Shown here in pieces: positions 40,774-56,118 of a stretch of DNA of 64,000 nt; positions within the stretch are counted from its first letter, which is position 1; every line of letters begins with the position of its first letter. A model generated the notes under the pieces. That model saw nothing but the letters and a program-made list of their open reading frames with translations, was not told where the DNA came from and ran no database searches. The position numbers and the translations under genes were made by a program. Location: the sequence record PV754031.1; one strand, given 5' to 3'.

Positions 40774-42807
40774 ATGAATCTTAATCGTTATAAAGCGCGT
40801 GATCTTCTAAATCTAAGTTATGATGATTTATGGTCACTCCCTTCAGAATGGCATCTAATCGAATTTGATGATGGTAAAACGGTTGTGTCAGTTGACCGTA
40901 TTACCAAATTATCCGTTCTGTGTTGGTATCCTCTTAAACATTATAAAGATTGCCCAATTCCATCTGATCACCATATCGATTTCAATCGCATCTTAACTGA
41001 TAACCCTAAAGATTATCTAAATGTTGAAGGTGGCCGAGTAACATCTAAGGCCATGGTTAAGCATTTAAATAAGGCTATTTGGAACATCTATGATTGGTCA
41101 GGTGAAACAGTAGATCCTGAAGTACTATCTAAACTGGCTATTGAAGGTAAGAACTGGCTGTATAATCAGACCACTGTGAAACTGTCTGAATATCTAGCAA
41201 CCTTGTCGATGTTTGATATTGCTGAAGTATATAATCATCCCAAGGTACGTGAGGCTAACCATAATATCGAACCAACTACTTATGGTATCGAAAAAATTAG
41301 TTATGGTAAAGTCAAAGAAGTATTTAATGATCCTACCCAATTCATTGGTAACAGCATCATTGAAGGTCTTCGTTCTGGTACTCAGAAAACTGAACAGCTT
41401 CTACAAGCATTTGCTTGGCGGGGCTTTCCAACTGACATTAACTCAGATATCTTTAAATATCCGGTAACAACTGGTTATATTGATGGTATTTGGAATCTGT
41501 ATGAGAATATGATTGAATCTCGTTCAGGTACTAAAGCACTACTATATAACAAAGAACTACTGCGAGTAACTGAATACTTTAACCGGAAATCTCAGCTTAT
41601 TGCACAATATGTCCAAAGGCTACATCCTGGTGATTGTAAGACCACAATCTTAGCTGAGTATCCTGTAACTAAGTTAACTTTAAAAGCATTCAAAGGAAAA
41701 TATTATCAAAAAGAAGATGGTAAACTAGACTGGATCCGTGGAAATGAAACACACCTAATTGGAACTAAACAGAAATTCAGGTCTGTATTTGGATGTAATC
41801 ATCCAGATAGTCAGGGTATCTGTATGACTTGTTATGGCCGACTAGGTATCAATATTCCAAAAGGAACTAATATCGGTCAGGTTGCTGCCGTATCGATGGG
41901 TGACAAAATTACTTCAGCAGTATTGTCTACTAAACACACCGATGCGTCTTCTGCTGTAGAACAATATAAACTTGGCAAAATTGAAAGTAATTATTTAAGA
42001 ACAGGTGAAATCCCAGAGACACTATATCTAAAGAAAGAACTTACTCAGAAGGATTATCGTTTAGTAATCGCACGGTCAGAGGCAGAAAACCTTGCTGACA
42101 TTTTAATGATTGATGACCTTACTGCATATCCAGCTACTTCAGCTACTGAACTAACCAGCCTGGCCCTAGTCTATGATGATGAGGTGAATGGTGAATGTGG
42201 TGATGTTCTGACTGTGTCGCTGTATAACCGTAGGGCTAGTCTATCTATTGAAATGCTAAAGCATATTAAGATGGTCCGTTGGGAACTAGATCAGCGAGAC
42301 AATATCGTCATTAGTCTTCGTGGTTTTGATTTTAACCTACCATTCTTAACGCTACCAAATAAGCACGTAAACATGTATGAAGTAATGAAACGATTCCAAA
42401 GTTTCTTACATTCCGGTAGTGACTCAGCCGAGGCAGGTAAACTAAGCACTGAGAAAGTTGGATATACGTCTAAAACGTATCTTAAAAACTACAAGTCACC
42501 AATTGAAGCACTACCTGTATTTGCAACAATGGCTAATGAAAAGATTAGCCTTAATATTTCCCATTGTGAGATCTTGATATACGCTATGATGATCCGTTCA
42601 GCTCAATATCGAGACTATCGCTTACCTAAACCCGGTATTAATGGCCAATTTGAAAAATATAATAGGCTAATGCAATGTCGTAGTTTAGGTGGTGCGATGG
42701 CTTTCGAAAAGCAGCATGAGCCACTAAATAACCCAGGCAGTTTCCTTAACAAGATGAGGAATGACCATCCATATGACTTACTAGTTAAAGGTGGTAAACT
42801 GCGATAG
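40774..42807 (+). CDS. rpoC: nvRNAP beta-prime C-terminal subunit (gp74)
   Basis: GIC..CYG zinc motif, NIGQVAA and VLSTKHT; GAGGT SD. Confidence 0.93.
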   Translation: MNLNRYKARDLLNLSYDDLWSLPSEWHLIEFDDGKTVVSVDRITKLSVLCWYPLKHYKDCPIPSDHHIDFNRILTDNPKDYLNVEGGRVTSKAMVKHLNKAIWNIYDWSGETVDPEVLSKLAIEGKNWLYNQTTVKLSEYLATLSMFDIAEVYNHPKVREANHNIEPTTYGIEKISYGKVKEVFNDPTQFIGNSIIEGLRSGTQKTEQLLQAFAWRGFPTDINSDIFKYPVTTGYIDGIWNLYENMIESRSGTKALLYNKELLRVTEYFNRKSQLIAQYVQRLHPGDCKTTILAEYPVTKLTLKAFKGKYYQKEDGKLDWIRGNETHLIGTKQKFRSVFGCNHPDSQGICMTCYGRLGINIPKGTNIGQVAAVSMGDKITSAVLSTKHTDASSAVEQYKLGKIESNYLRTGEIPETLYLKKELTQKDYRLVIARSEAENLADILMIDDLTAYPATSATELTSLALVYDDEVNGECGDVLTVSLYNRRASLSIEMLKHIKMVRWELDQRDNIVISLRGFDFNLPFLTLPNKHVNMYEVMKRFQSFLHSGSDSAEAGKLSTEKVGYTSKTYLKNYKSPIEALPVFATMANEKISLNISHCEILIYAMMIRSAQYRDYRLPKPGINGQFEKYNRLMQCRSLGGAMAFEKQHEPLNNPGSFLNKMRNDHPYDLLVKGGKLR

Positions 42808-42865
42808 ACGTGGAGGACGTGAGGTTTGGGGAGCACTGCTCCCCTTACCGATCGTTGATTTTTTT

Positions 42866-44404
42866 ATGAAACCGATTCTTACAGCAGAACGATACACCCA
42901 TGGTGTTCGTTTATCCGGTTACGATCGGGAAACATACTTAAAGATGACTGGATATCTTAATAAACTGGTTTTAAAAGAACCTAAGAAGATACCTGGTCAA
43001 CGCACCATAATGGAAATAAAGAAAAAATATTATGGTGAAACAGAAGATGGTAAATCTGTATTCATCCATCGTGAATGTCTTCAAGAACTTATTAATTATC
43101 TAGCCGATAAGAATATACCATCTACTAGAATTGAAATTGTAGATATTCCTGTACCAACAGCTGTTAAAGTAGACTATACTTTATTTGAACATTATGTTCT
43201 AAGGGATTATCAGGAAACCATCCGCGAAGATATTCTAAGACCACATTTACATTCAGCACGTGTTGATTTACAGACTGGTAAAGGTAAAACCTTAACTAGT
43301 TTAGCTTCAGTTGCAGTAATGAAAGAACGTGGTGTTGTTATGATTCCACCTAAATATTTCGGTATTTGGGAGAAAGCATTAAAAGAAACATTTGTTGGTT
43401 ATGAAGATCAGCTAGGTATAAAATATTTAAAAGTATCTGGATCTGCTGAGTTACAGAATCTAATTAATCGCGGACTAGAGAATGATTTAGAGGGTGTTGA
43501 AATTATTCTCATTAGTTCTACAACATACCGTGCATATATCGATACTTTTGAACGATTAGGTGAAAAAATCGATGTAGTTGGATTTAATGTACCACCACCT
43601 AGATTCCATGAGGTTATTGGAGCAGGTTGGCAGATCAATGATGAGATTCAAGAAGATCCAGGATTAGTATTTCGTACTGATCTATATACCAATGTCAATA
43701 AACAAATCTATTTATCAGCTACTCCATACACTGGTAATCAGTTTGTTACTAAAATGATTGATGTCATGCTACCTGCCACTACAAAGTGTAGGTTACCTGC
43801 ATATGACTCATACATCAATGTTATTGGCTTGTTATATAGTGAACCAACTATTAAACCTAAGGACTATTTAACTCCATTTAAAAATACATATAACCATGCT
43901 CGTTATGAAACAGTAATGATGAAGAATCCTAGGCGACTAGACTTCTATTTAAAGATGGTTAAACGTATTGTAGATGGCGTTTATATAAAGGATCGTATTG
44001 AAGGTCAGAAATGTTTGCTATTATGCGCGACTGTAAACTTTATCGATGTACTGACAGCTTATCTTAAGAAACAATATCCAGATCTTCAGATTAATAGACA
44101 TGTTTCGGGTAGTCCGTATGATAGATTAATGACTAATGATATCACTGTATCAACTATTAAATCATCTGGTACTGGTGTTGATATTAGGAATTTAAGGGAA
44201 GTTATTCTATTACAAGCAACTGACTCTAAAAAGGACAGCATCCAAATTCTTGGACGACTAAGACCATTGAAGAACTGGCCTGATGTAATACCAAGGTTAA
44301 CATTCATGGTTTGTAATAACATACCTCATCATTGCAGATACGCTAGAAATAAAGAAAATCATTTCATGGGTAAAACTAAAAGTATGCGCATGATGCGTTT
44401 ATAG
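42866..44404 (+). CDS. Superfamily 2 helicase (gp75)
   Basis: LRDYQ Q-motif, TGKGKT Walker A, NDEIQE, LSAT, GTGVD and QILGRLR; start uncertain (42791 or 42866). Confidence 0.9.
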   Translation: MKPILTAERYTHGVRLSGYDRETYLKMTGYLNKLVLKEPKKIPGQRTIMEIKKKYYGETEDGKSVFIHRECLQELINYLADKNIPSTRIEIVDIPVPTAVKVDYTLFEHYVLRDYQETIREDILRPHLHSARVDLQTGKGKTLTSLASVAVMKERGVVMIPPKYFGIWEKALKETFVGYEDQLGIKYLKVSGSAELQNLINRGLENDLEGVEIILISSTTYRAYIDTFERLGEKIDVVGFNVPPPRFHEVIGAGWQINDEIQEDPGLVFRTDLYTNVNKQIYLSATPYTGNQFVTKMIDVMLPATTKCRLPAYDSYINVIGLLYSEPTIKPKDYLTPFKNTYNHARYETVMMKNPRRLDFYLKMVKRIVDGVYIKDRIEGQKCLLLCATVNFIDVLTAYLKKQYPDLQINRHVSGSPYDRLMTNDITVSTIKSSGTGVDIRNLREVILLQATDSKKDSIQILGRLRPLKNWPDVIPRLTFMVCNNIPHHCRYARNKENHFMGKTKSMRMMRL

Positions 44405-52115: not shown

Positions 52116-52149
52116 CATATTGCCTCCCCTAGGGGAGGCTTTATGCTGA
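52116..52149 (+). terminator. Intrinsic terminator, identical to 5070-5103
   Basis: 34-nt exact match. Confidence 0.8.
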
Positions 52150-52215: not shown

Positions 52216-54132
52216 ATGTCTAATGAACAACAGGTTACAAATAAGAAAAAGATTAAGGGCATTGAAGCCAAACATATTACTTATTGTACTGATCAATTTG
52301 GTAAGTTTACAGATGCGCATTTCGTTAAAGAACGAATTCATTTTGAAGATGGTACAACTGCAAATAATTTAAGGATGTGGGAAAACTACCAGCGTCCTTT
52401 TTGGATTACCTCAAAAGGAATGCGTAACCATAAAGAAAAGAAAGATTACGAATATGAGCGTAACTTAGTTAAATACATGTCAACTCAAATTGACATGAAA
52501 CGTAAGATTAGTAAAATCCTAGGTGACTATTCGGCTAGATCTCTTCGTCAACTAGCGCGTAGTCCTTACCTATATGGCAGTGATGTTAGTTCAACCTGTT
52601 ATCTGAAGCATGATTATCAAGAACGTTATCCTGGTCTAATCTCTCTAAACACTGTTGCTGGCGGTGACATCGAAACCAACGTTTATGAAGCTGAGAACGA
52701 TGGTCAGATTATCTGTATGTCAGTTACACATAAGAACAAAGCTTTCTTAGCCTATTTAAAACGATGGGTTAGTGATATTGAAGATCCAGTGAAAGAGACA
52801 TTAGAACAAGCACAAAAAGAAGAGGTGCTATCGCATCTAATTAAAGAACGTGGTCTAGATATTGAAGTAATGGTTGTTGAAACACCAGTGGATATTATTA
52901 TTGAATGTTTTAAACGACTACATATCTGGAAACCAGATTTCTTCGCATTCTGGAATATTAGCTTCGACATTGGCAGAATCTTAAAAACATTAGAACATTA
53001 TGGCGTTAATCCAGCTGATGTTTTTTCTGATCCATCGGTACCTAAGAATTATAGGTATTTCCATTTTAAGATTGACGAACCTATGACCACCACTGCATCT
53101 GGGGTCACTAAATCTAAAGGACCGGAGGATCAATGGCATTGGATTACAGCACCCTCTAGTTTTCAATGTATCGATTCTATGTCAACTTATCGAGTAACTC
53201 GATTAGCTAAAGGACGTGATCCTAACTATCGGTTAGAGTCTATTCTTAGAAAAGAACTAAACATCGATAAATCCACGACCATTAAAAATGATAAGGACTT
53301 AGAAGATTTTATTGAAGGTTTTAATAAACAACTAGTTGACCGACCAGGCGGCGTTATTACTAAATATATTAAAAATGTAGGTAGTAATGAATGGGTACCG
53401 GTGGATGATTTTATATTAAATGATAACTTTACCTATGGTGATTCTATTAGATATGTAATGGAATTTGGTAAGTTAACCTTTAAAGAAACTGCACATCTTG
53501 GTGGTATCGATTGGCACCGTGAGATGCAGACTAAGCATAAAATCAAATATGGTCTTTATAACATCATCGACTCCATTCGACTAGAACAACTTGATGAACA
53601 AGTAAATGACCTTGGTCGCTCTATAAGTCTATTCTCTAAGGCATCTGACTATAAGAACTTTAGTTCTAACCCAAAACGACTATGTGACGATATGCACTTC
53701 TGGTATTTGAATAGACCAGAGCCATGTGTCATTGGTTCAAGTTCAGATCAGATGGTGCATGAACTTGATCAATATGTTATTGGCCATAATGATTGGATTG
53801 TTACACTACCATCATACATGGCAGGTCCAAATGGATTGCAGTGTGTTAAAGATTTACCGAATTATAAAACCTTAATCTTCTGTCATATCGCCGACCTTGA
53901 CATCGTGTCGACATATCCTAACGTTAGTCAGATTCTAAATATTGCACGTGAAACATGTGTGATGGAATTCTCAATGATGGAAGGAATTAGTGAACACCAT
54001 CGCCGTGAAGTTGGCGTAAACTTAACAGGTGGTAGGGTTAATGCTATTGAAATCACACAGAAGATCATGGGTGCTCCTAAAATGGACACCCTGCTAGAGA
54101 AGTTTATTAATACCTATAAGAACCCAAAGTAA
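52216..54132 (+). CDS. polB: Split family-B DNA polymerase, exonuclease plus motif A subunit (gp82)
   Basis: ExoI GDIET, ExoII FWNISFD, ExoIII YNIID and motif A DLDIVSTYPN. Confidence 0.9.
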   Translation: MSNEQQVTNKKKIKGIEAKHITYCTDQFGKFTDAHFVKERIHFEDGTTANNLRMWENYQRPFWITSKGMRNHKEKKDYEYERNLVKYMSTQIDMKRKISKILGDYSARSLRQLARSPYLYGSDVSSTCYLKHDYQERYPGLISLNTVAGGDIETNVYEAENDGQIICMSVTHKNKAFLAYLKRWVSDIEDPVKETLEQAQKEEVLSHLIKERGLDIEVMVVETPVDIIIECFKRLHIWKPDFFAFWNISFDIGRILKTLEHYGVNPADVFSDPSVPKNYRYFHFKIDEPMTTTASGVTKSKGPEDQWHWITAPSSFQCIDSMSTYRVTRLAKGRDPNYRLESILRKELNIDKSTTIKNDKDLEDFIEGFNKQLVDRPGGVITKYIKNVGSNEWVPVDDFILNDNFTYGDSIRYVMEFGKLTFKETAHLGGIDWHREMQTKHKIKYGLYNIIDSIRLEQLDEQVNDLGRSISLFSKASDYKNFSSNPKRLCDDMHFWYLNRPEPCVIGSSSDQMVHELDQYVIGHNDWIVTLPSYMAGPNGLQCVKDLPNYKTLIFCHIADLDIVSTYPNVSQILNIARETCVMEFSMMEGISEHHRREVGVNLTGGRVNAIEITQKIMGAPKMDTLLEKFINTYKNPK

Positions 54133-54500
54133 TATATCAGTGGAAGCGCCGAGGAGGATATGAATGTTCATCTGTTGGTGACAAAAGATTCTCGGCTCTT
54201 TACGCAAGGCTTCCTGATGGCAGAACAATTGAGGAAGCTTGGCAGTTAGATTGTAAAGGATATCGCATATACTCCAACCATTGGAAAGCTGGTAAAGGAA
54301 AACCACCACTAGACGGGTATAATCCCAAATATGATGATTATAAAAATCTGTGGAAAGTATGGGCGGTATCTAATAAACATCTAATGGATGAATTGCGTCA
54401 GAATGCAAAAGAACATGATAACTATCTTTCTGATGTTTTTGCTTCTACTGATATTTCACAGGCACGTGCTCTAGCAGAACTACTTAATGAAGGATATTAA
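54120..54500 (+). CDS. Start-less NADAR-like reading frame (about 122-126 aa) in the -1 frame of gp82
   Basis: EPKVIYQWKRRGGYECSSVGDKRFSALYARLPDGRTIEEAWQLDCKGY...SQARALAELLNEGY; no canonical start before the conserved block; not in the ORF track. Confidence 0.7.
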   Translation, partial: EPKVIYQWKRRGGYECSSVGDKRFSALYARLPDGRTIEEAWQLDCKGYRIYSNHWKAGKGKPPLDGYNPKYDDYKNLWKVWAVSNKHLMDELRQNAKEHDNYLSDVFASTDISQARALAELLNEGY

Positions 54501-54568
54501 AAAATGGAAGGTATTCCTAATTAAATATTATCAATTGATCATTACTGCTAACATAAACTTCGACACAT

Positions 54569-54602
54569 CATAAAACCCTCCCATTACGGGAGGGTTTATT
54601 TC
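54569..54602. terminator. Bidirectional terminator
   Basis: AAACCCTCCC-ATTAC-GGGAGGGTTT. Confidence 0.8.
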
Positions 54603-54603
54603 G

Positions 54604-56118
54604 TTAACTAATTTGGTATTTTAAATTCTGATTACCGTTTAGAACATAAATCTTACCGTCATTATTAAACGTATTGGCAAAACCTGCATCCACTAAACCA
54701 GTTTCTAAATTACCTAAATTTATCCATCGTGCTAATCGTGGTTCATAATACTTAATTGGTGCGTTATTTTGATTTTCACCAGCGATTACATAAAGTTCAC
54801 CAGATGGGCGTATATTAATAGCTGCACCAAGAGGTATACCTGTAGTTATTGGTTTGGACCAATTATTGTTGGTTTGATTGTACGATATGATTCCAGTGTT
54901 AACACCAGCACCAACCGTACCACCAATAACGCATACGCTATTATTATAAATACTCACTGAATAATCTTGGGTATATTCCCCAGTATCATTAAATGCTGCA
55001 CCACTGGTATATGTATCTGTAGTTGGATTGTACATTAATGTAAATCCACGATTATTTGTCGCAGTTGTATCAGCTGCACCTAATATGTAGATTAACCCAT
55101 TAAGACTAGTTCCACGTGCATACCGGCAAGCTATCGTGCCTGGTGATTTTATTTCCCATGTATTAGTTGCAGGATCATAACACTGCATATCTTTAGTAAG
55201 TACACCATCTGTGGCACTTTCACCACCATAGAAATATACTTTACCATTAAATGCAACAGCCGAGCATTGTTTAACTGCTATAGGCGTACCAGTTGGTTGT
55301 AATGTTGTTAACTTACCCGTGACTAAATTCAGTGTACGTAGAGCAGTATTAGCATTATTCTTACCACCGTAATAATAGACTAAGTTACCTATTTGGGCAC
55401 CTGCTGCCATTTCGTTATCAGTTTCAAAATCAGTAAGTTTAATAACATTATCTTTAACGAATGGATATGTACCACTAGCATAAACCACTGGACGCCAACC
55501 TTGGGTTGCAGCACCCGTTTCACTACTTGACGAGCTAGTTATATCAATCGCATAGTAGCCACGATAGAGCTGGTCATTAACTGGATCACTACCTGGGTCT
55601 CTTCCCCAGTTAGTAGTACCATCAGTGCTAATACCACCAGCGACCGCTTGGTTAATACCTAAGTCATTATCTGTAAATTTATAAGGCCAGTTAGCACCAT
55701 TTAAATTAGATACGTGAACATTATAAAGTAACCTTTGCCATTCTGATGTGGCACCAGCCATTGTTAATAAACCAAATTTATAAATGTTCCCCATAAATCT
55801 AACTTCATAGTCACCATTACGGAGTCCGGCATTATTAAGCCGTGATTTTTGTATTGATTTACGAGCTGGTTTCTTTGGTATGTAACAAGTAACATTTTTA
55901 TTAGAGAACTTTAACCATGGTTGTCCATCATTGATTACTGTTCCAAATGTCATATTAACTAATTTAGCTGCATCATCATAACCAAATAATTCTGAAGATG
56001 TTGTTTCACCATACAAACCTAATTCCCTTGTCCCAGCTATCAGTGTTTTAGGACCTGGATAAGGATCGGAATATATAGGCGTATTTGTTAGTCCAGAAGA
56101 CAACAATAACTCAAACAT
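54604..56118 (-). CDS. Virion protein with a C-terminal Kelch-like beta-propeller (gp83-like)
   Basis: Repeated YxxGG...YDP/YNP...W units; MFELLLS...PGPKTLIAG N-terminus typical of phiKZ tail-associated paralogues. Confidence 0.8.
   Translation of the reverse strand: MFELLLSSGLTNTPIYSDPYPGPKTLIAGTRELGLYGETTSSELFGYDDAAKLVNMTFGTVINDGQPWLKFSNKNVTCYIPKKPARKSIQKSRLNNAGLRNGDYEVRFMGNIYKFGLLTMAGATSEWQRLLYNVHVSNLNGANWPYKFTDNDLGINQAVAGGISTDGTTNWGRDPGSDPVNDQLYRGYYAIDITSSSSSETGAATQGWRPVVYASGTYPFVKDNVIKLTDFETDNEMAAGAQIGNLVYYYGGKNNANTALRTLNLVTGKLTTLQPTGTPIAVKQCSAVAFNGKVYFYGGESATDGVLTKDMQCYDPATNTWEIKSPGTIACRYARGTSLNGLIYILGAADTTATNNRGFTLMYNPTTDTYTSGAAFNDTGEYTQDYSVSIYNNSVCVIGGTVGAGVNTGIISYNQTNNNWSKPITTGIPLGAAINIRPSGELYVIAGENQNNAPIKYYEPRLARWINLGNLETGLVDAGFANTFNNDGKIYVLNGNQNLKYQIS

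What the first reader, a model, noticed from the sequence alone, without database searches (positions are those of the whole stretch)
54100..54500. Orphan NADAR-like domain that a -1 frameshift could fuse to the DNA polymerase exonuclease subunit
Seen: behind the gp82 stop is an intact frame (54120-54500) with no ATG/GTG/TTG before its conserved-looking core, so the ORF track missed it. It is in the -1 frame of gp82, and the last gp82 codons read aaC CCA AAG taa, an X-XXY-YYZ heptamer ending in AAG directly before the stop. Slippage would give ...NPK-VIYQWKRRGGYECSS..., a 761-aa fusion. Known: A-AAG heptamers drive -1 frameshifting (lambda G/GT, dnaX), and NADAR enzymes remove DarT-installed ADP-ribose from DNA, with T4-like phage NADARs countering DarTG. 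Inference: E-C-S-S, F-S-A-L and I-E-x-x-W-Q-x-x-x-K resemble NADAR motifs as I recall them, so this may be a replisome-tethered DNA de-ADP-ribosylase. Alternatives are ATA initiation at the TAATA overlap (54132) or a gene whose TAATG start has mutated. The nearest clear stem (GCCGAGGA/TTCTCGGC) begins about 18 nt downstream, farther than typical stimulators.
Basis: partly seen in the sequence, partly recalled or inferred. Interest (0 to 1): 0.88.

Follow-up and report, generated by a model that had tools for sequence, protein, structure and literature searches.

The report
Frameshift extends jumbo-phage DNA polymerase
In phiKZ-type jumbo phages a conserved 122-residue enzyme-like domain with no start codon sits one base out of frame behind the DNA polymerase gene gp82, and comparison of about 30 related phages indicates it is made as a tail on the polymerase when ribosomes slip back one base at a classic slippery site.

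Summary
An intact frame (54120-54500) lies in the -1 frame of gp82. It has no ATG/GTG/TTG before 54384, and C_CCA_AAG (54123-54129) abuts the gp82 stop.

In all 19 relatives with the domain in the -1 frame that carry a slippery heptamer, the heptamer lies in the polymerase frame inside the short overlap. It is C_CCA_AAG, G_GGA_AAG or A_AAA_AAG, the three heptamers described as highly shift-prone in E. coli. Thirteen of these lineages have no start codon. The only two -1-frame relatives without a heptamer have ATGA or GTGA start-stop overlaps. Three lineages place the domain in frame behind a UAG. Two encode a true in-frame polymerase-domain fusion.

The domain (phrog_9995, no Pfam) is under strong purifying selection and folds confidently (pLDDT 96.6).

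NADAR membership is not shown. Pfam and profile-profile tests fail, and Foldseek gives only weak, recurrent NADAR hits. Fusions with DUF4326, SLOG and RNase H place the domain in NAD/ADP-ribose and nucleic-acid contexts.

I found no literature on this. Nothing was tested at the protein level.

The parts
52122..52139 (.). Terminator-like hairpin that bounds the gp82 unit upstream.
   Evidence: GCCTCCCCTAGGGGAGGC followed by a T-run, found on both strands.
52216..54132 (+). gp82, the N-terminal/exonuclease plus motif-A part of the split family-B DNA polymerase. This is the zero-frame product, 638 aa.
   Evidence: phrog_3011 'DNA polymerase', E 2.7e-241. Annotated as DNA polymerase in phiKZ, KEN19 and 201phi2-1.
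54123..54129 (+). Slippery heptamer C_CCA_AAG in the gp82 frame. Proposed -1 shift site.
   Evidence: The same or an equivalent heptamer (G_GGA_AAG, A_AAA_AAG) is present in 19 of the 21 relatives with the domain in the -1 frame. These are named highly shift-prone heptamers in PMC5009743.
54130..54132 (+). gp82 zero-frame stop TAA, directly 3' of the heptamer. Candidate 'shifty stop' stimulator.
   Evidence: A stop directly follows the heptamer in 12 of 13 CCCAAAG/GGGAAAG lineages.
54129..54500 (+). -1-frame coding sequence of the 123-residue extension (V + the 122-aa domain 'X', phrog_9995), ending in TAA. The frame is open from 54120.
   Evidence: AF2 pLDDT is 96.6. pN/pS against phiKZ is 0.044 over codons 1-84.
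54132..54134 (+). ATA codon at the position of the initiator Met of stand-alone homologues.
   Evidence: The codon is ATG in PhiPA3 and L017, and ACA/ACT/GTA/GTT in other start-less lineages.
54384..54500 (+). Internal ATG ORF of 38 aa, annotated as PHIKZ082.1. This is an annotation artefact covering the last helix of X.
   Evidence: phrog_33573. The AF2 model is one compact domain spanning residues 1-122.
54160..54249 (+). 29-aa ORF behind GGAGGA, out of frame inside X. Probably spurious; the GGAGGA is the Gly-Gly codons of X.
   Evidence: Annotated as KEN19_CDS0330.
54573..54597 (+). Intrinsic-terminator-like hairpin that closes the gp82-X unit, shared with the convergent gp83.
   Evidence: 10-pair stem followed by a T-run.

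Best explanation
gp82 and the downstream frame form one recoded gene.

Most ribosomes terminate at TAA 54130 and make the 638-aa polymerase part. A fraction slips back one base on C_CCA_AAG and continues for 123 codons. The slip is most simply tRNA-Lys moving from AAG to AAA, either while the stop waits in the A site or as a tandem P/A-site slip. The result is a 761-aa polymerase carrying the C-terminal domain X.

X is a compact, highly conserved, phage-borne enzyme-like domain with invariant E11, D17, R19, E34, Q38, K42 and D101. Its likeliest role is hydrolysis of an ADP-ribose or other N-glycosidic adduct, or of a nucleotide derivative. Delivering it on the polymerase would place it at the replication fork inside the phage nucleus.

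Shown:
- the sequence anatomy;
- the comparative pattern;
- purifying selection;
- a confident fold;
- the domain architectures.

Inferred:
- that slippage happens, and how efficiently;
- the chemistry of X (about 0.4-0.5 that it is NADAR-like);
- nuclear co-import.
For: Heptamer and start-codon pattern. Among lineages with X in the -1 frame:
- 13 have a heptamer and no canonical start (window/phiKZ, HPP-Temi, Phabio, L015, L018, L019, Noxifer, L024, L023, L026, L041, L059, L123);
- 6 have a heptamer plus a start;
- 2 have no heptamer but an ATGA or GTGA start-stop overlap (L100, L167);
- 0 have neither.

The heptamer type changes among C_CCA_AAG, G_GGA_AAG (L019) and A_AAA_AAG. The codon before CCA always ends in C although the residue varies (AAC, CCC, TCC, CTC, GCC, GTC). 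It is CTG before GGA.

In the A_AAA_AAG clade the heptamer is the only invariant block in a linker of variable length.

PMC5009743 names these three heptamers as highly shift-prone in E. coli. It also describes dnaX variants in which the long product comes from the shift and the zero-frame stop directly follows the site.

Natural in-frame fusions exist.
- P0348/L094 is 698 aa, 30% identical to gp82 (E 9e-40), with X at 561-677 and a PhiKZ_MCP gene next door.
- L096 reads ...EPPKVVSPSIVYTWKR, which is the predicted shift product of 201phi2-1.

L071, L088 and L148 have X in frame behind TAG-CTN and no start codon.

Control: 77 of 89 X loci not linked to the polymerase have a nearby start, against 9 of 28 polymerase-linked ones.

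Selection: 6 synonymous against 1 non-synonymous change between the window and phiKZ in the start-less part.

Terminators bound gp82 and X as one unit.

Function:
- AF2 pLDDT 96.6;
- recurrent weak NADAR and DUF4326-protein Foldseek hits;
- fusions or neighbourhoods with DUF4326, YAcAr/YpsA SLOG, DUF488-N3a and RNase H;
Against: - There is no protein-level evidence of any kind.
- No conserved RNA structure lies 3' of the site, and no consistent upstream Shine-Dalgarno-like element. Efficiency could therefore be low.
- Six lineages keep a usable start codon, so free X may be the main product there.
- The Psa21/RVTF4 clade has X in the +1 frame, mostly with a TTG or GTG start.
- L096 could be a homopolymer assembly error.
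- The counts are not phylogenetically corrected.
- I did not check whether P. aeruginosa or the phage carries a tRNA-Lys(CUU), which would damp A_AAG slippage.
- For function: no Pfam hit; hhalign probability <1%; Foldseek to solved NADAR E 4.6, rmsd 8.3; no DarT neighbour in any context examined.
Confidence: 0.75

Rival explanations
1. X is made as a free 14-kDa protein by termination-reinitiation (translational coupling) at the non-canonical ATA in the TAATA overlap. No frameshift is involved.
For: Homologues use TAATG (PhiPA3, L017), GTGA (PS119XW, L167) or ATGA (L100) overlaps, which are typical of coupling. ATA is one base away from ATG. No Shine-Dalgarno sequence precedes the gene in any lineage.
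Against: In other start-less lineages the same codon is ACA, ACT, GTA or GTT. The A_AAA_AAG clade has no near-cognate start in a conserved place. This model does not explain the conservation and covariation of the heptamer, or the matching wobble base before it. It may still add a little free X in phiKZ.
Confidence: 0.12
2. X is a decaying or silent remnant in the phiKZ group after loss of its ATG. The heptamer is just the codons for a conserved Pro-Lys C-terminus.
For: The PhiPA3 homologue has an ATG at this position. The polymerase ends in PK in many lineages.
Against: - pN/pS is 0.044 between the window and phiKZ, and 0.075 against PhiPA3, in the start-less part.
- The frame is intact in 46 records.
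- At least 13 start-less lineages keep the domain.
- Pro is always CCA and Lys always AAG, and the preceding wobble base always matches.
- In L019 the Pro is replaced by Gly while the slippery pattern is preserved.
Confidence: 0.03
3. The fusion arises at the RNA level, by transcriptional slippage of the phage RNA polymerases on the A-run, rather than on the ribosome.
For: The A_AAA_AAG clade has runs of six A. The phiKZ polymerases are non-canonical. This reading would give the same protein.
Against: The CCCAAAG and GGGAAAG sites have only three A. PMC5009743 describes bacterial transcriptional slippage on runs of about nine A or T. The pattern is frame-specific (X_XXA_AAG in the zero frame), as expected for tRNA re-pairing.
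Confidence: 0.05

Closest known systems
dnaX (tau/gamma) -1 frameshifting. In particular the 'reversed' bacterial dnaX genes, in which the long product needs the shift and the zero-frame stop follows the site (PMC5009743).
   Same: - A replication protein is made in two forms from one mRNA.
- The heptamer is of the A_AAG type (A_AAA_AAG in the Noxifer clade).
- The stop codon lies directly after the site.
- The shifted product carries an extra C-terminal domain.
   Different: - The protein here is a phage family-B polymerase part, not a clamp-loader subunit.
- No 3' stem-loop or 5' Shine-Dalgarno stimulator was found.
- The added module is an independent, horizontally mobile enzyme-like domain.
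Phage lambda G/GT tail-chaperone frameshift (G_GGA_AAG) and other long-tailed-phage equivalents.
   Same: - Conserved -1 slippage occurs near the end of the upstream phage ORF.
- The heptamer is the same in L019.
- The mechanism is kept while the sequence drifts.
   Different: - The gene class is different (replication, not tail assembly).
- Here some relatives have replaced the shift by an in-frame UAG, a hard fusion or an independent start.
B. subtilis cdd and IS1222 A_AAG slippage, and the 'shifty stop' sites of Weiss et al. 1987 (as cited in PMC5009743).
   Same: tRNA-Lys slips from AAG to AAA next to a stop codon, extending the protein at its C-terminus.
   Different: The cdd event is described as incidental. 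The event here is conserved across genera and attaches a 122-residue folded domain.
NADAR/YbiA-like N-glycosidases: DarG1-type antitoxins, T4-like AdfN (PMC11257639), and PDB 8bau.
   Same: - X is a small alpha+beta domain of helices flanked by short strands.
- It shares the motif pattern FS.., DG, E-x3-Q-x3/4-K.
- Its architectural partners are the same (SLOG, DUF4326).
- It is phage-borne.
   Different: - X has about 120 residues against at least 145.
- There is no Pfam hit and no significant profile-profile match.
- Foldseek TMq is 0.4-0.55.
- The spacing from the candidate catalytic Glu to the Lys is one residue longer.
- No DarT neighbour was seen.
phiKZ AdfM (gp104), the nuclear macrodomain that removes DarT2 ADP-ribose from phage DNA (PMC13309987).
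   Same: It is a chimallivirus counter-defence enzyme that must reach the phage nucleus to act on replicating DNA. It offers a possible functional parallel for X.
   Different: AdfM is a separate, actively imported protein of a different fold with demonstrated activity. X has no demonstrated activity and would ride on the polymerase.

Membership tests
-1 programmed ribosomal frameshift site (bacterial X_XXA_AAG type) | Slippery heptamer X_XXY_YYZ in the zero frame, inside the window where both frames are open. | tested here: met
   C_CCA_AAG lies at 54123-54129 within a 13-nt overlap. The background rate is 1.8e-4 per codon.
-1 programmed ribosomal frameshift site (bacterial X_XXA_AAG type) | The -1 frame downstream encodes a conserved, selected polypeptide. 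| tested here: met
   phrog_9995 at E 1.7e-55. There are 839 representatives. pN/pS is 0.044.
-1 programmed ribosomal frameshift site (bacterial X_XXA_AAG type) | The shift site is conserved in relatives beyond what coding requires. | tested here: met
   19 of the 21 lineages with X in the -1 frame carry CCCAAAG, GGGAAAG or AAAAAAG. The preceding wobble base always matches. The heptamer is the only invariant block of the A-clade linker.
-1 programmed ribosomal frameshift site (bacterial X_XXA_AAG type) | No independent initiation codon for the downstream frame. | tested here: met
   The window has none before 54384. Thirteen lineages have none. Against this, 77 of 89 loci not linked to the polymerase do have one. 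Six heptamer-bearing lineages do have a start.
-1 programmed ribosomal frameshift site (bacterial X_XXA_AAG type) | A stimulatory element: a 3' stem-loop or pseudoknot, or a 5' Shine-Dalgarno-like sequence. | tested here: not met
   Window fold z is -0.92. RNAalifold gives -1.9 and 0 kcal/mol with no covariation. Rfam finds nothing. Only the adjacent stop codon is conserved.
-1 programmed ribosomal frameshift site (bacterial X_XXA_AAG type) | The trans-frame protein is observed. | not testable with these tools
   This needs mass spectrometry, western blotting or a reporter. No paper found mentions it.
NADAR (PF08719, YbiA-like) | Match to the family profile. | tested here: not met
   No Pfam hit for X or for any of 44 homologues, even at E 10. 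NCBIfam finds none.
NADAR (PF08719, YbiA-like) | Profile-profile homology. | tested here: not met
   hhalign probability is 0.2-0.3% against YbiA, the YbiA family, and 18 diverse NADARs. The only aligned stretch pairs FSA~FSNF, DG~G and TIEE.YQ~tsEH.yQ.
NADAR (PF08719, YbiA-like) | YbiA-like alpha+beta fold. | tested here: inconclusive
   The model has pLDDT 96.6. PDB 8bau matches at E 4.6, TMq 0.42, rmsd 8.3. About 10 NADAR-named BFVD hits fall at E 0.3-8, TMq 0.4-0.55, probability <=0.54.
NADAR (PF08719, YbiA-like) | Catalytic Glu and phosphate-binding Lys (E43/K50 of P. nicotianae NADAR, PMC11543638). | tested here: inconclusive
   E34, Q38 and K42 are invariant in X. The Glu-to-Lys spacing is 8 against 7. 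The correspondence rests on a non-significant alignment.
NADAR (PF08719, YbiA-like) | Hydrolysis of ADP-ribosyl-guanine or related N-glycosides. | not testable with these tools
   This needs a biochemical assay.
phrog_9995 (phage protein family of unknown function) | Full-length match to the family profile. | tested here: met
   E 1.7e-55, with residues 3-123 matching profile positions 2-123 of 124.

The most novel reading that the evidence does not exclude
Nucleus-forming jumbo phages use translational recoding to fit a set fraction of their replicative polymerase with a previously unrecognised, minimal NADAR-like N-glycosidase. The recoding is interchangeably -1 slippage on three heptamer types, UAG readthrough, or hard fusion. 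The enzyme strips base adducts such as DarT1-type ADP-ribosyl-guanine at the fork. It enters the phage nucleus by riding on the polymerase. The same domain is used by other phages in injected polyvalent proteins.
Probability: 0.25. Interest if true: 0.85.

Novelty: new variant of a known kind. Interest (0 to 1): 0.74.

Why it matters
- phiKZ is the model nucleus-forming phage and a therapy candidate. Its essential polymerase part gp82 would have a second, longer isoform that no annotation shows.
- A widespread phage domain (839 representative clusters, no Pfam family) would gain a first functional anchor, at the replisome.
- The locus is a natural series in which one fusion is achieved by -1 slippage on three heptamers, by an in-frame UAG, by true fusion or by separate initiation. 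That makes it useful for studying how recoding evolves.
- It gives a direct way to test how much a bare heptamer plus an adjacent stop can do in Pseudomonas.
- If X removes ADP-ribose or similar adducts, it would complement AdfM (anti-DarT2). It would also show that cargo can reach the phage nucleus by fusion to an imported protein.
- Practically, PHIKZ082.1 and phrog_33573, and many truncated calls in Psa21, Phabio, Noxifer, PS119XW, Viktualia and HPP-Temi, are annotation artefacts.

Tried and rejected
- **ATA (54132) as a general initiator.** Rejected because the codon is not conserved as a near-cognate start.
- **The GGAGGA + ATG 54160 ORF of 29 aa.** It lies out of frame inside X, and the GGAGGA is the Gly-Gly codons.
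It is not significant and not conserved. The GGAGGA/TCCTCC hairpin seen in PhiPA3-like sequences begins about 22 nt after the heptamer and is broken in phiKZ.
- **Pseudogene.** Rejected by pN/pS.
- **Sequence-level function calls.** Pfam, NCBIfam, PADLOC and PDB sequences, with a single sequence and with a profile, gave nothing meaningful. The uL3 and mS48 hits are chance-level.
- **NADAR by hhalign.** Three attempts, including a hand-built set of 10 phage NADARs plus 8 YbiA-like proteins, were all non-significant.
- **NADAR paralogues among about 190 fetched loci.** None found.
- **DarT or other toxin neighbours of X.** None found in six phage contexts.
- **The giant X-containing proteins.** No other Pfam or PHROG domain found.
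- **Literature.** Searches for phiKZ frameshifting, PHIKZ082.1, and frameshifting in jumbo-phage polymerases found nothing on this locus.
- **DOI 10.1093/nargab/lqad029** (a paper I recalled as covering the rhodanese-phosphatase superfamily) is not held.
Full report
**1. What is in the sequence**

The window is a Phikzvirus genome. It is 100% identical over 53500-54700 to PA7, SL2, KEN19 and others, and 96% identical to phiKZ.

gp82 runs from 52216 to 54132 (638 aa, phrog_3011 'DNA polymerase', E 2.7e-241). It ends AAC CCA AAG TAA.

The -1 frame is open from 54120 and runs to the TAA at 54498-54500. It reads EPK-VIYQWKRRGGYECSSVGDKRFSALYARLPDGRTIEEAWQLDCKGY...ELLNEGY. The first ATG/GTG/TTG in that frame is at 54384. 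That is why phiKZ carries only a 38-aa 'PHIKZ082.1' annotation there.

Terminator-like hairpins at 52122-52139 and 54573-54597 bracket gp82 plus this frame as one unit.

**2. The frame is a real, selected gene**

- It matches phrog_9995 (unknown function) end to end at E 1.7e-55.
- At least 500 proteins of about 122-130 aa in the metagenome collection match at 50-88% identity.
- A profile search finds 839 representative clusters.
- In an alignment of 44 homologues, 29 columns are invariant: Y10 E11 S13 G16 D17 R19 S21 A22 ... D29 G30 R31 E34 Q38 D40 K42 K55 G56 P59 ... D101 Q110. The homologues' initiator Met aligns with the window's ATA at 54132.
- Between the window and phiKZ, the start-less part (codons 1-84) has 6 synonymous and 1 non-synonymous change (pN/pS 0.044). 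Against PhiPA3 the ratio is 0.075.
- Forty-six phage records encode the same 122 residues at >=99% identity.
- AlphaFold2 on the 44-sequence alignment gives one compact alpha+beta domain, mean pLDDT 96.6 and pTM 0.89. The 38-aa annotated piece is therefore only its last helix.

**3. How it is expressed: the comparative test**

I collected every locus where a gp82-like polymerase C-terminus directly precedes the domain (here called X). Sources were GenBank phages, IMG/VR and metagenomes. I then read each junction.

(A) X in the -1 frame, a slippery heptamer in the polymerase frame inside the overlap, and no canonical start. Thirteen lineages:
- window/phiKZ/L095, HPP-Temi, Phabio, L015 and L018: C_CCA_AAG followed by a stop;
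- L019: CTG GGA AAG TAG, that is G_GGA_AAG;
- Noxifer, L024, L023, L026, L041, L059 and L123/125: A_AAA_AAG, 8-32 codons before the stop.

(B) A heptamer and also a start. Six lineages:
- PhiPA3 and L017 (TAATG);
- PS119XW (GTGA);
- 201phi2-1, Viktualia and L097 (GTG).

(C) No heptamer, but a start overlapping the stop. Two lineages: L100 (ATGA) and L167 (GTGA).

(D) Neither heptamer nor start: none.

(E) X in frame behind a single TAG and with no start: L071/72 (TAG CTA), L088 (TAG CTG) and L148 (TAG CTC). The L088 polymerase has no other in-frame TAG.

(F) True in-frame fusions:
- P0348/L094 is 698 aa and 30% identical to gp82 (E 9e-40). X lies at residues 561-677, and a PhiKZ_MCP gene lies upstream.
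- L096 is 201phi2-1-like. Its ...GAA CCC CCC AAA GTT GTA AGC... reads EPPKVVSPSIVYTWKR, which is exactly the product predicted for a -1 slip in 201phi2-1.

(G) The Psa21/RVTF4 clade has X in the +1 frame. The codon at the Met position is TTG or GTG in four lineages, CTG in L127 and TCG in L117/118. This clade is unresolved.

**4. Why this points to ribosomal slippage**

- The three heptamers are the ones that the review PMC5009743 singles out. [quoted passage not shown]
- The constraint goes beyond protein coding. The residue before Pro varies (N, P, S, L, A, V), yet its codon always ends in C. Pro is always CCA and Lys is always AAG. Where Pro becomes Gly (L019), the preceding codon ends in G.
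- In the A-clade the linker between the heptamer and the X core varies from about 12 to 50 nt, and the seven heptamer columns are its only invariant block.
- In the window's 45 long ORFs there are only 3 in-frame X_XXA_AAG heptamers in 16,505 codons.
- As a control, 77 of 89 non-identical X loci that are not behind a polymerase have a canonical start within 25 codons of the YEC motif. The rest are mostly N-terminal fusions. Only 9 of 28 polymerase-linked loci have one (Fisher p 9e-8, not phylogenetically corrected).
- The codon at the Met position in start-less lineages is ATA, ACA, ACT, GTA or GTT. Non-canonical initiation is therefore not a general explanation.

**5. Mechanism**

I found no conserved 3' structure.
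- The window's local fold is no better than shuffles (z -0.92).
- RNAalifold on 12 CCCAAAG/GGGAAAG junctions gives -1.9 kcal/mol with no compensatory pairs.
- RNAalifold on 7 A_AAA_AAG junctions predicts no pairs.
- Rfam finds nothing apart from weak sub-threshold matches over the terminator hairpin.

What is conserved is a stop codon directly after the heptamer, in 12 of 13 CCCAAAG/GGGAAAG lineages.

The simplest reading is inference, based on the 'shifty stop' and A_AAG literature summarised in PMC5009743. With AAG in the P site and a slowly decoded stop in the A site, tRNA-Lys re-pairs with AAA, and GTA (Val) is read next. A tandem P/A-site slip gives the same protein.

PMC5009743 also describes bacterial dnaX genes in which the long product requires the shift and the zero-frame stop directly follows the site. 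That is the closest formal analogue. Efficiency is unknown.

**6. What X is**

Sequence methods give nothing: Pfam, NCBIfam, PADLOC and PDB sequences by single sequence and by profile.

Foldseek against the PDB has no significant hit. The only match with a sizeable TM-score is the NADAR of Phytophthora nicotianae, 8bau (E 4.6, TMq 0.42, rmsd 8.3).

Against BFVD, after four true family members, the list is dominated by weak hits. About ten are NADAR-named proteins (E 0.3-8, TMq 0.4-0.55, probability up to 0.54). About seven are 'DUF4326 domain-containing' proteins.

hhalign of X profiles gives probabilities below 1% in three comparisons: against YbiA, against a YbiA-family alignment, and against a diverse set I assembled (8 YbiA-like plus 10 phage NADARs). 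Yet the one stretch it aligns pairs X's FSA with FSNF, DGR with (D)G, and TIEE.YQ with tsEH.yQ. This puts invariant E34 on the catalytic Glu (residues from PMC11543638).

Independent context comes from domain architecture and gene neighbourhoods. X occurs:
- fused to DUF4326 (3 of 10 mid-size proteins scanned);
- fused to YAcAr/YpsA SLOG domains, to DUF488-N3a and to RNase H;
- next to separate YAcAr and DUF4326 genes;
- next to SNase and a RecD2-type helicase;
- inside giant 2,000-6,000-aa proteins with no other recognisable domain. One of these has a zincin-like HEAFH motif after X.

[quoted passage not shown] It also describes polyvalent, virion-injected proteins. X therefore sits where NADAR or Macro domains sit in such architectures.

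My estimate is 0.4-0.5 that X is a divergent NADAR-like N-glycosidase, and higher that it acts on a nucleotide or nucleic-acid adduct. No DarT neighbour was seen.

**7. Biological reading (inference)**

gp82 is the N-terminal/exonuclease plus motif-A part of a split family-B polymerase. Antisense knock-down of PHIKZ082 gave a phenotype in the phiKZ antisense-oligomer screen (PMC12571901).

phiKZ already sends a macrodomain, AdfM (gp104), into the phage nucleus to remove DarT2 ADP-ribose from its DNA (PMC13309987).

A polymerase-borne X would be delivered to the fork and into the nucleus without its own import signal. Recoding would fix its stoichiometry. Lineages that also keep a start may make free X as well.

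**8. Novelty**

I found no paper on frameshifting in this gene, on PHIKZ082.1, or on frameshifting in jumbo-phage polymerases. No GenBank record inspected annotates a slippage join.

The mechanism itself is classical. What is new:
- the instance, a phage replicative polymerase part;
- an uncharacterised cargo domain;
- the evolutionary interchange of -1 slippage on three heptamers, in-frame UAG, hard fusion and separate initiation.

**9. Limits**

- Nothing here is protein-level evidence.
- The lineage counts are not phylogenetically independent.
- L096 could be a homopolymer assembly error.
- The +1-frame clade and the TAG clade are unexplained.
- The tRNA-Lys repertoire was not checked.

Noticed in passing
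L003:1893-2198 (PhiPA3); L071 about 1725-2150: The PhiPA3 polymerase gene is interrupted by a group I intron (Rfam RF00028, 71.7 bits), directly after the motif HIADLD. The GenBank CDS stops inside the intron, and exon 2 runs on to the TAA that overlaps the X start. L071 has an insert of about 420 nt at the same place, with no Rfam hit at the gathering threshold.
   Followed up: partly
L071 2495, L088 2480, L148 about 2046 (loci): In three metagenomic chimallivirus lineages the polymerase ends in a single TAG, followed in frame by CTA, CTG or CTC and then the X domain with no start codon. This suggests UAG readthrough or a suppressor tRNA.
   Followed up: partly
L007, L010, L105, L108, L117, L118, L127 (Psa21/RVTF4 clade): X lies in the +1 frame and overlaps the last ~9 polymerase codons. 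The codon at the Met position is TTG, GTG, CTG or TCG. A conserved GAA AAG AAG just upstream would allow a -2 slip of tRNA-Lys.
   Followed up: no
L165 about 2485-2510: An X homologue with a good Shine-Dalgarno sequence and ATG has an in-frame TGA exactly at the conserved Trp (M I T * A R F G G Y E C). This suggests a TGA=Trp genetic code in that phage, or a recent mutation.
   Followed up: no
proteins P0253, P0264, P0272, P0276, P0282, P0292 and others: The X domain is embedded in giant 2,000-6,000-aa proteins that have no other Pfam or PHROG match. P0253 has a zincin-like HEAFH motif after X. They may be polyvalent, injected virion proteins.
   Followed up: partly
window 54384-54500; L004, L006, L007, L008, L009, L010, L011: PHIKZ082.1 and phrog_33573 (38 aa) are annotation artefacts. 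So are the shortened or fragmented downstream gene calls in PS119XW, Viktualia, Psa21, Phabio, Noxifer, RVTF4 and HPP-Temi. All arise because the true N-terminus has no start that the gene callers recognised.
   Followed up: yes
window 54160-54249: A 29-aa ORF with a strong GGAGGA six bases upstream is annotated in some records (KEN19_CDS0330). It lies out of frame inside X, and the GGAGGA is X's Gly-Gly codons.
   Followed up: partly
window 42790-44404 (+): The window's only other in-frame X_XXA_AAG heptamers are two T_TTA_AAG sites. One lies in a long + strand ORF (42790-44404). The other lies in an overlapping - strand ORF, whose strand-local coordinates I did not convert to window coordinates. 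I did not examine either for an open -1 frame.
   Followed up: no
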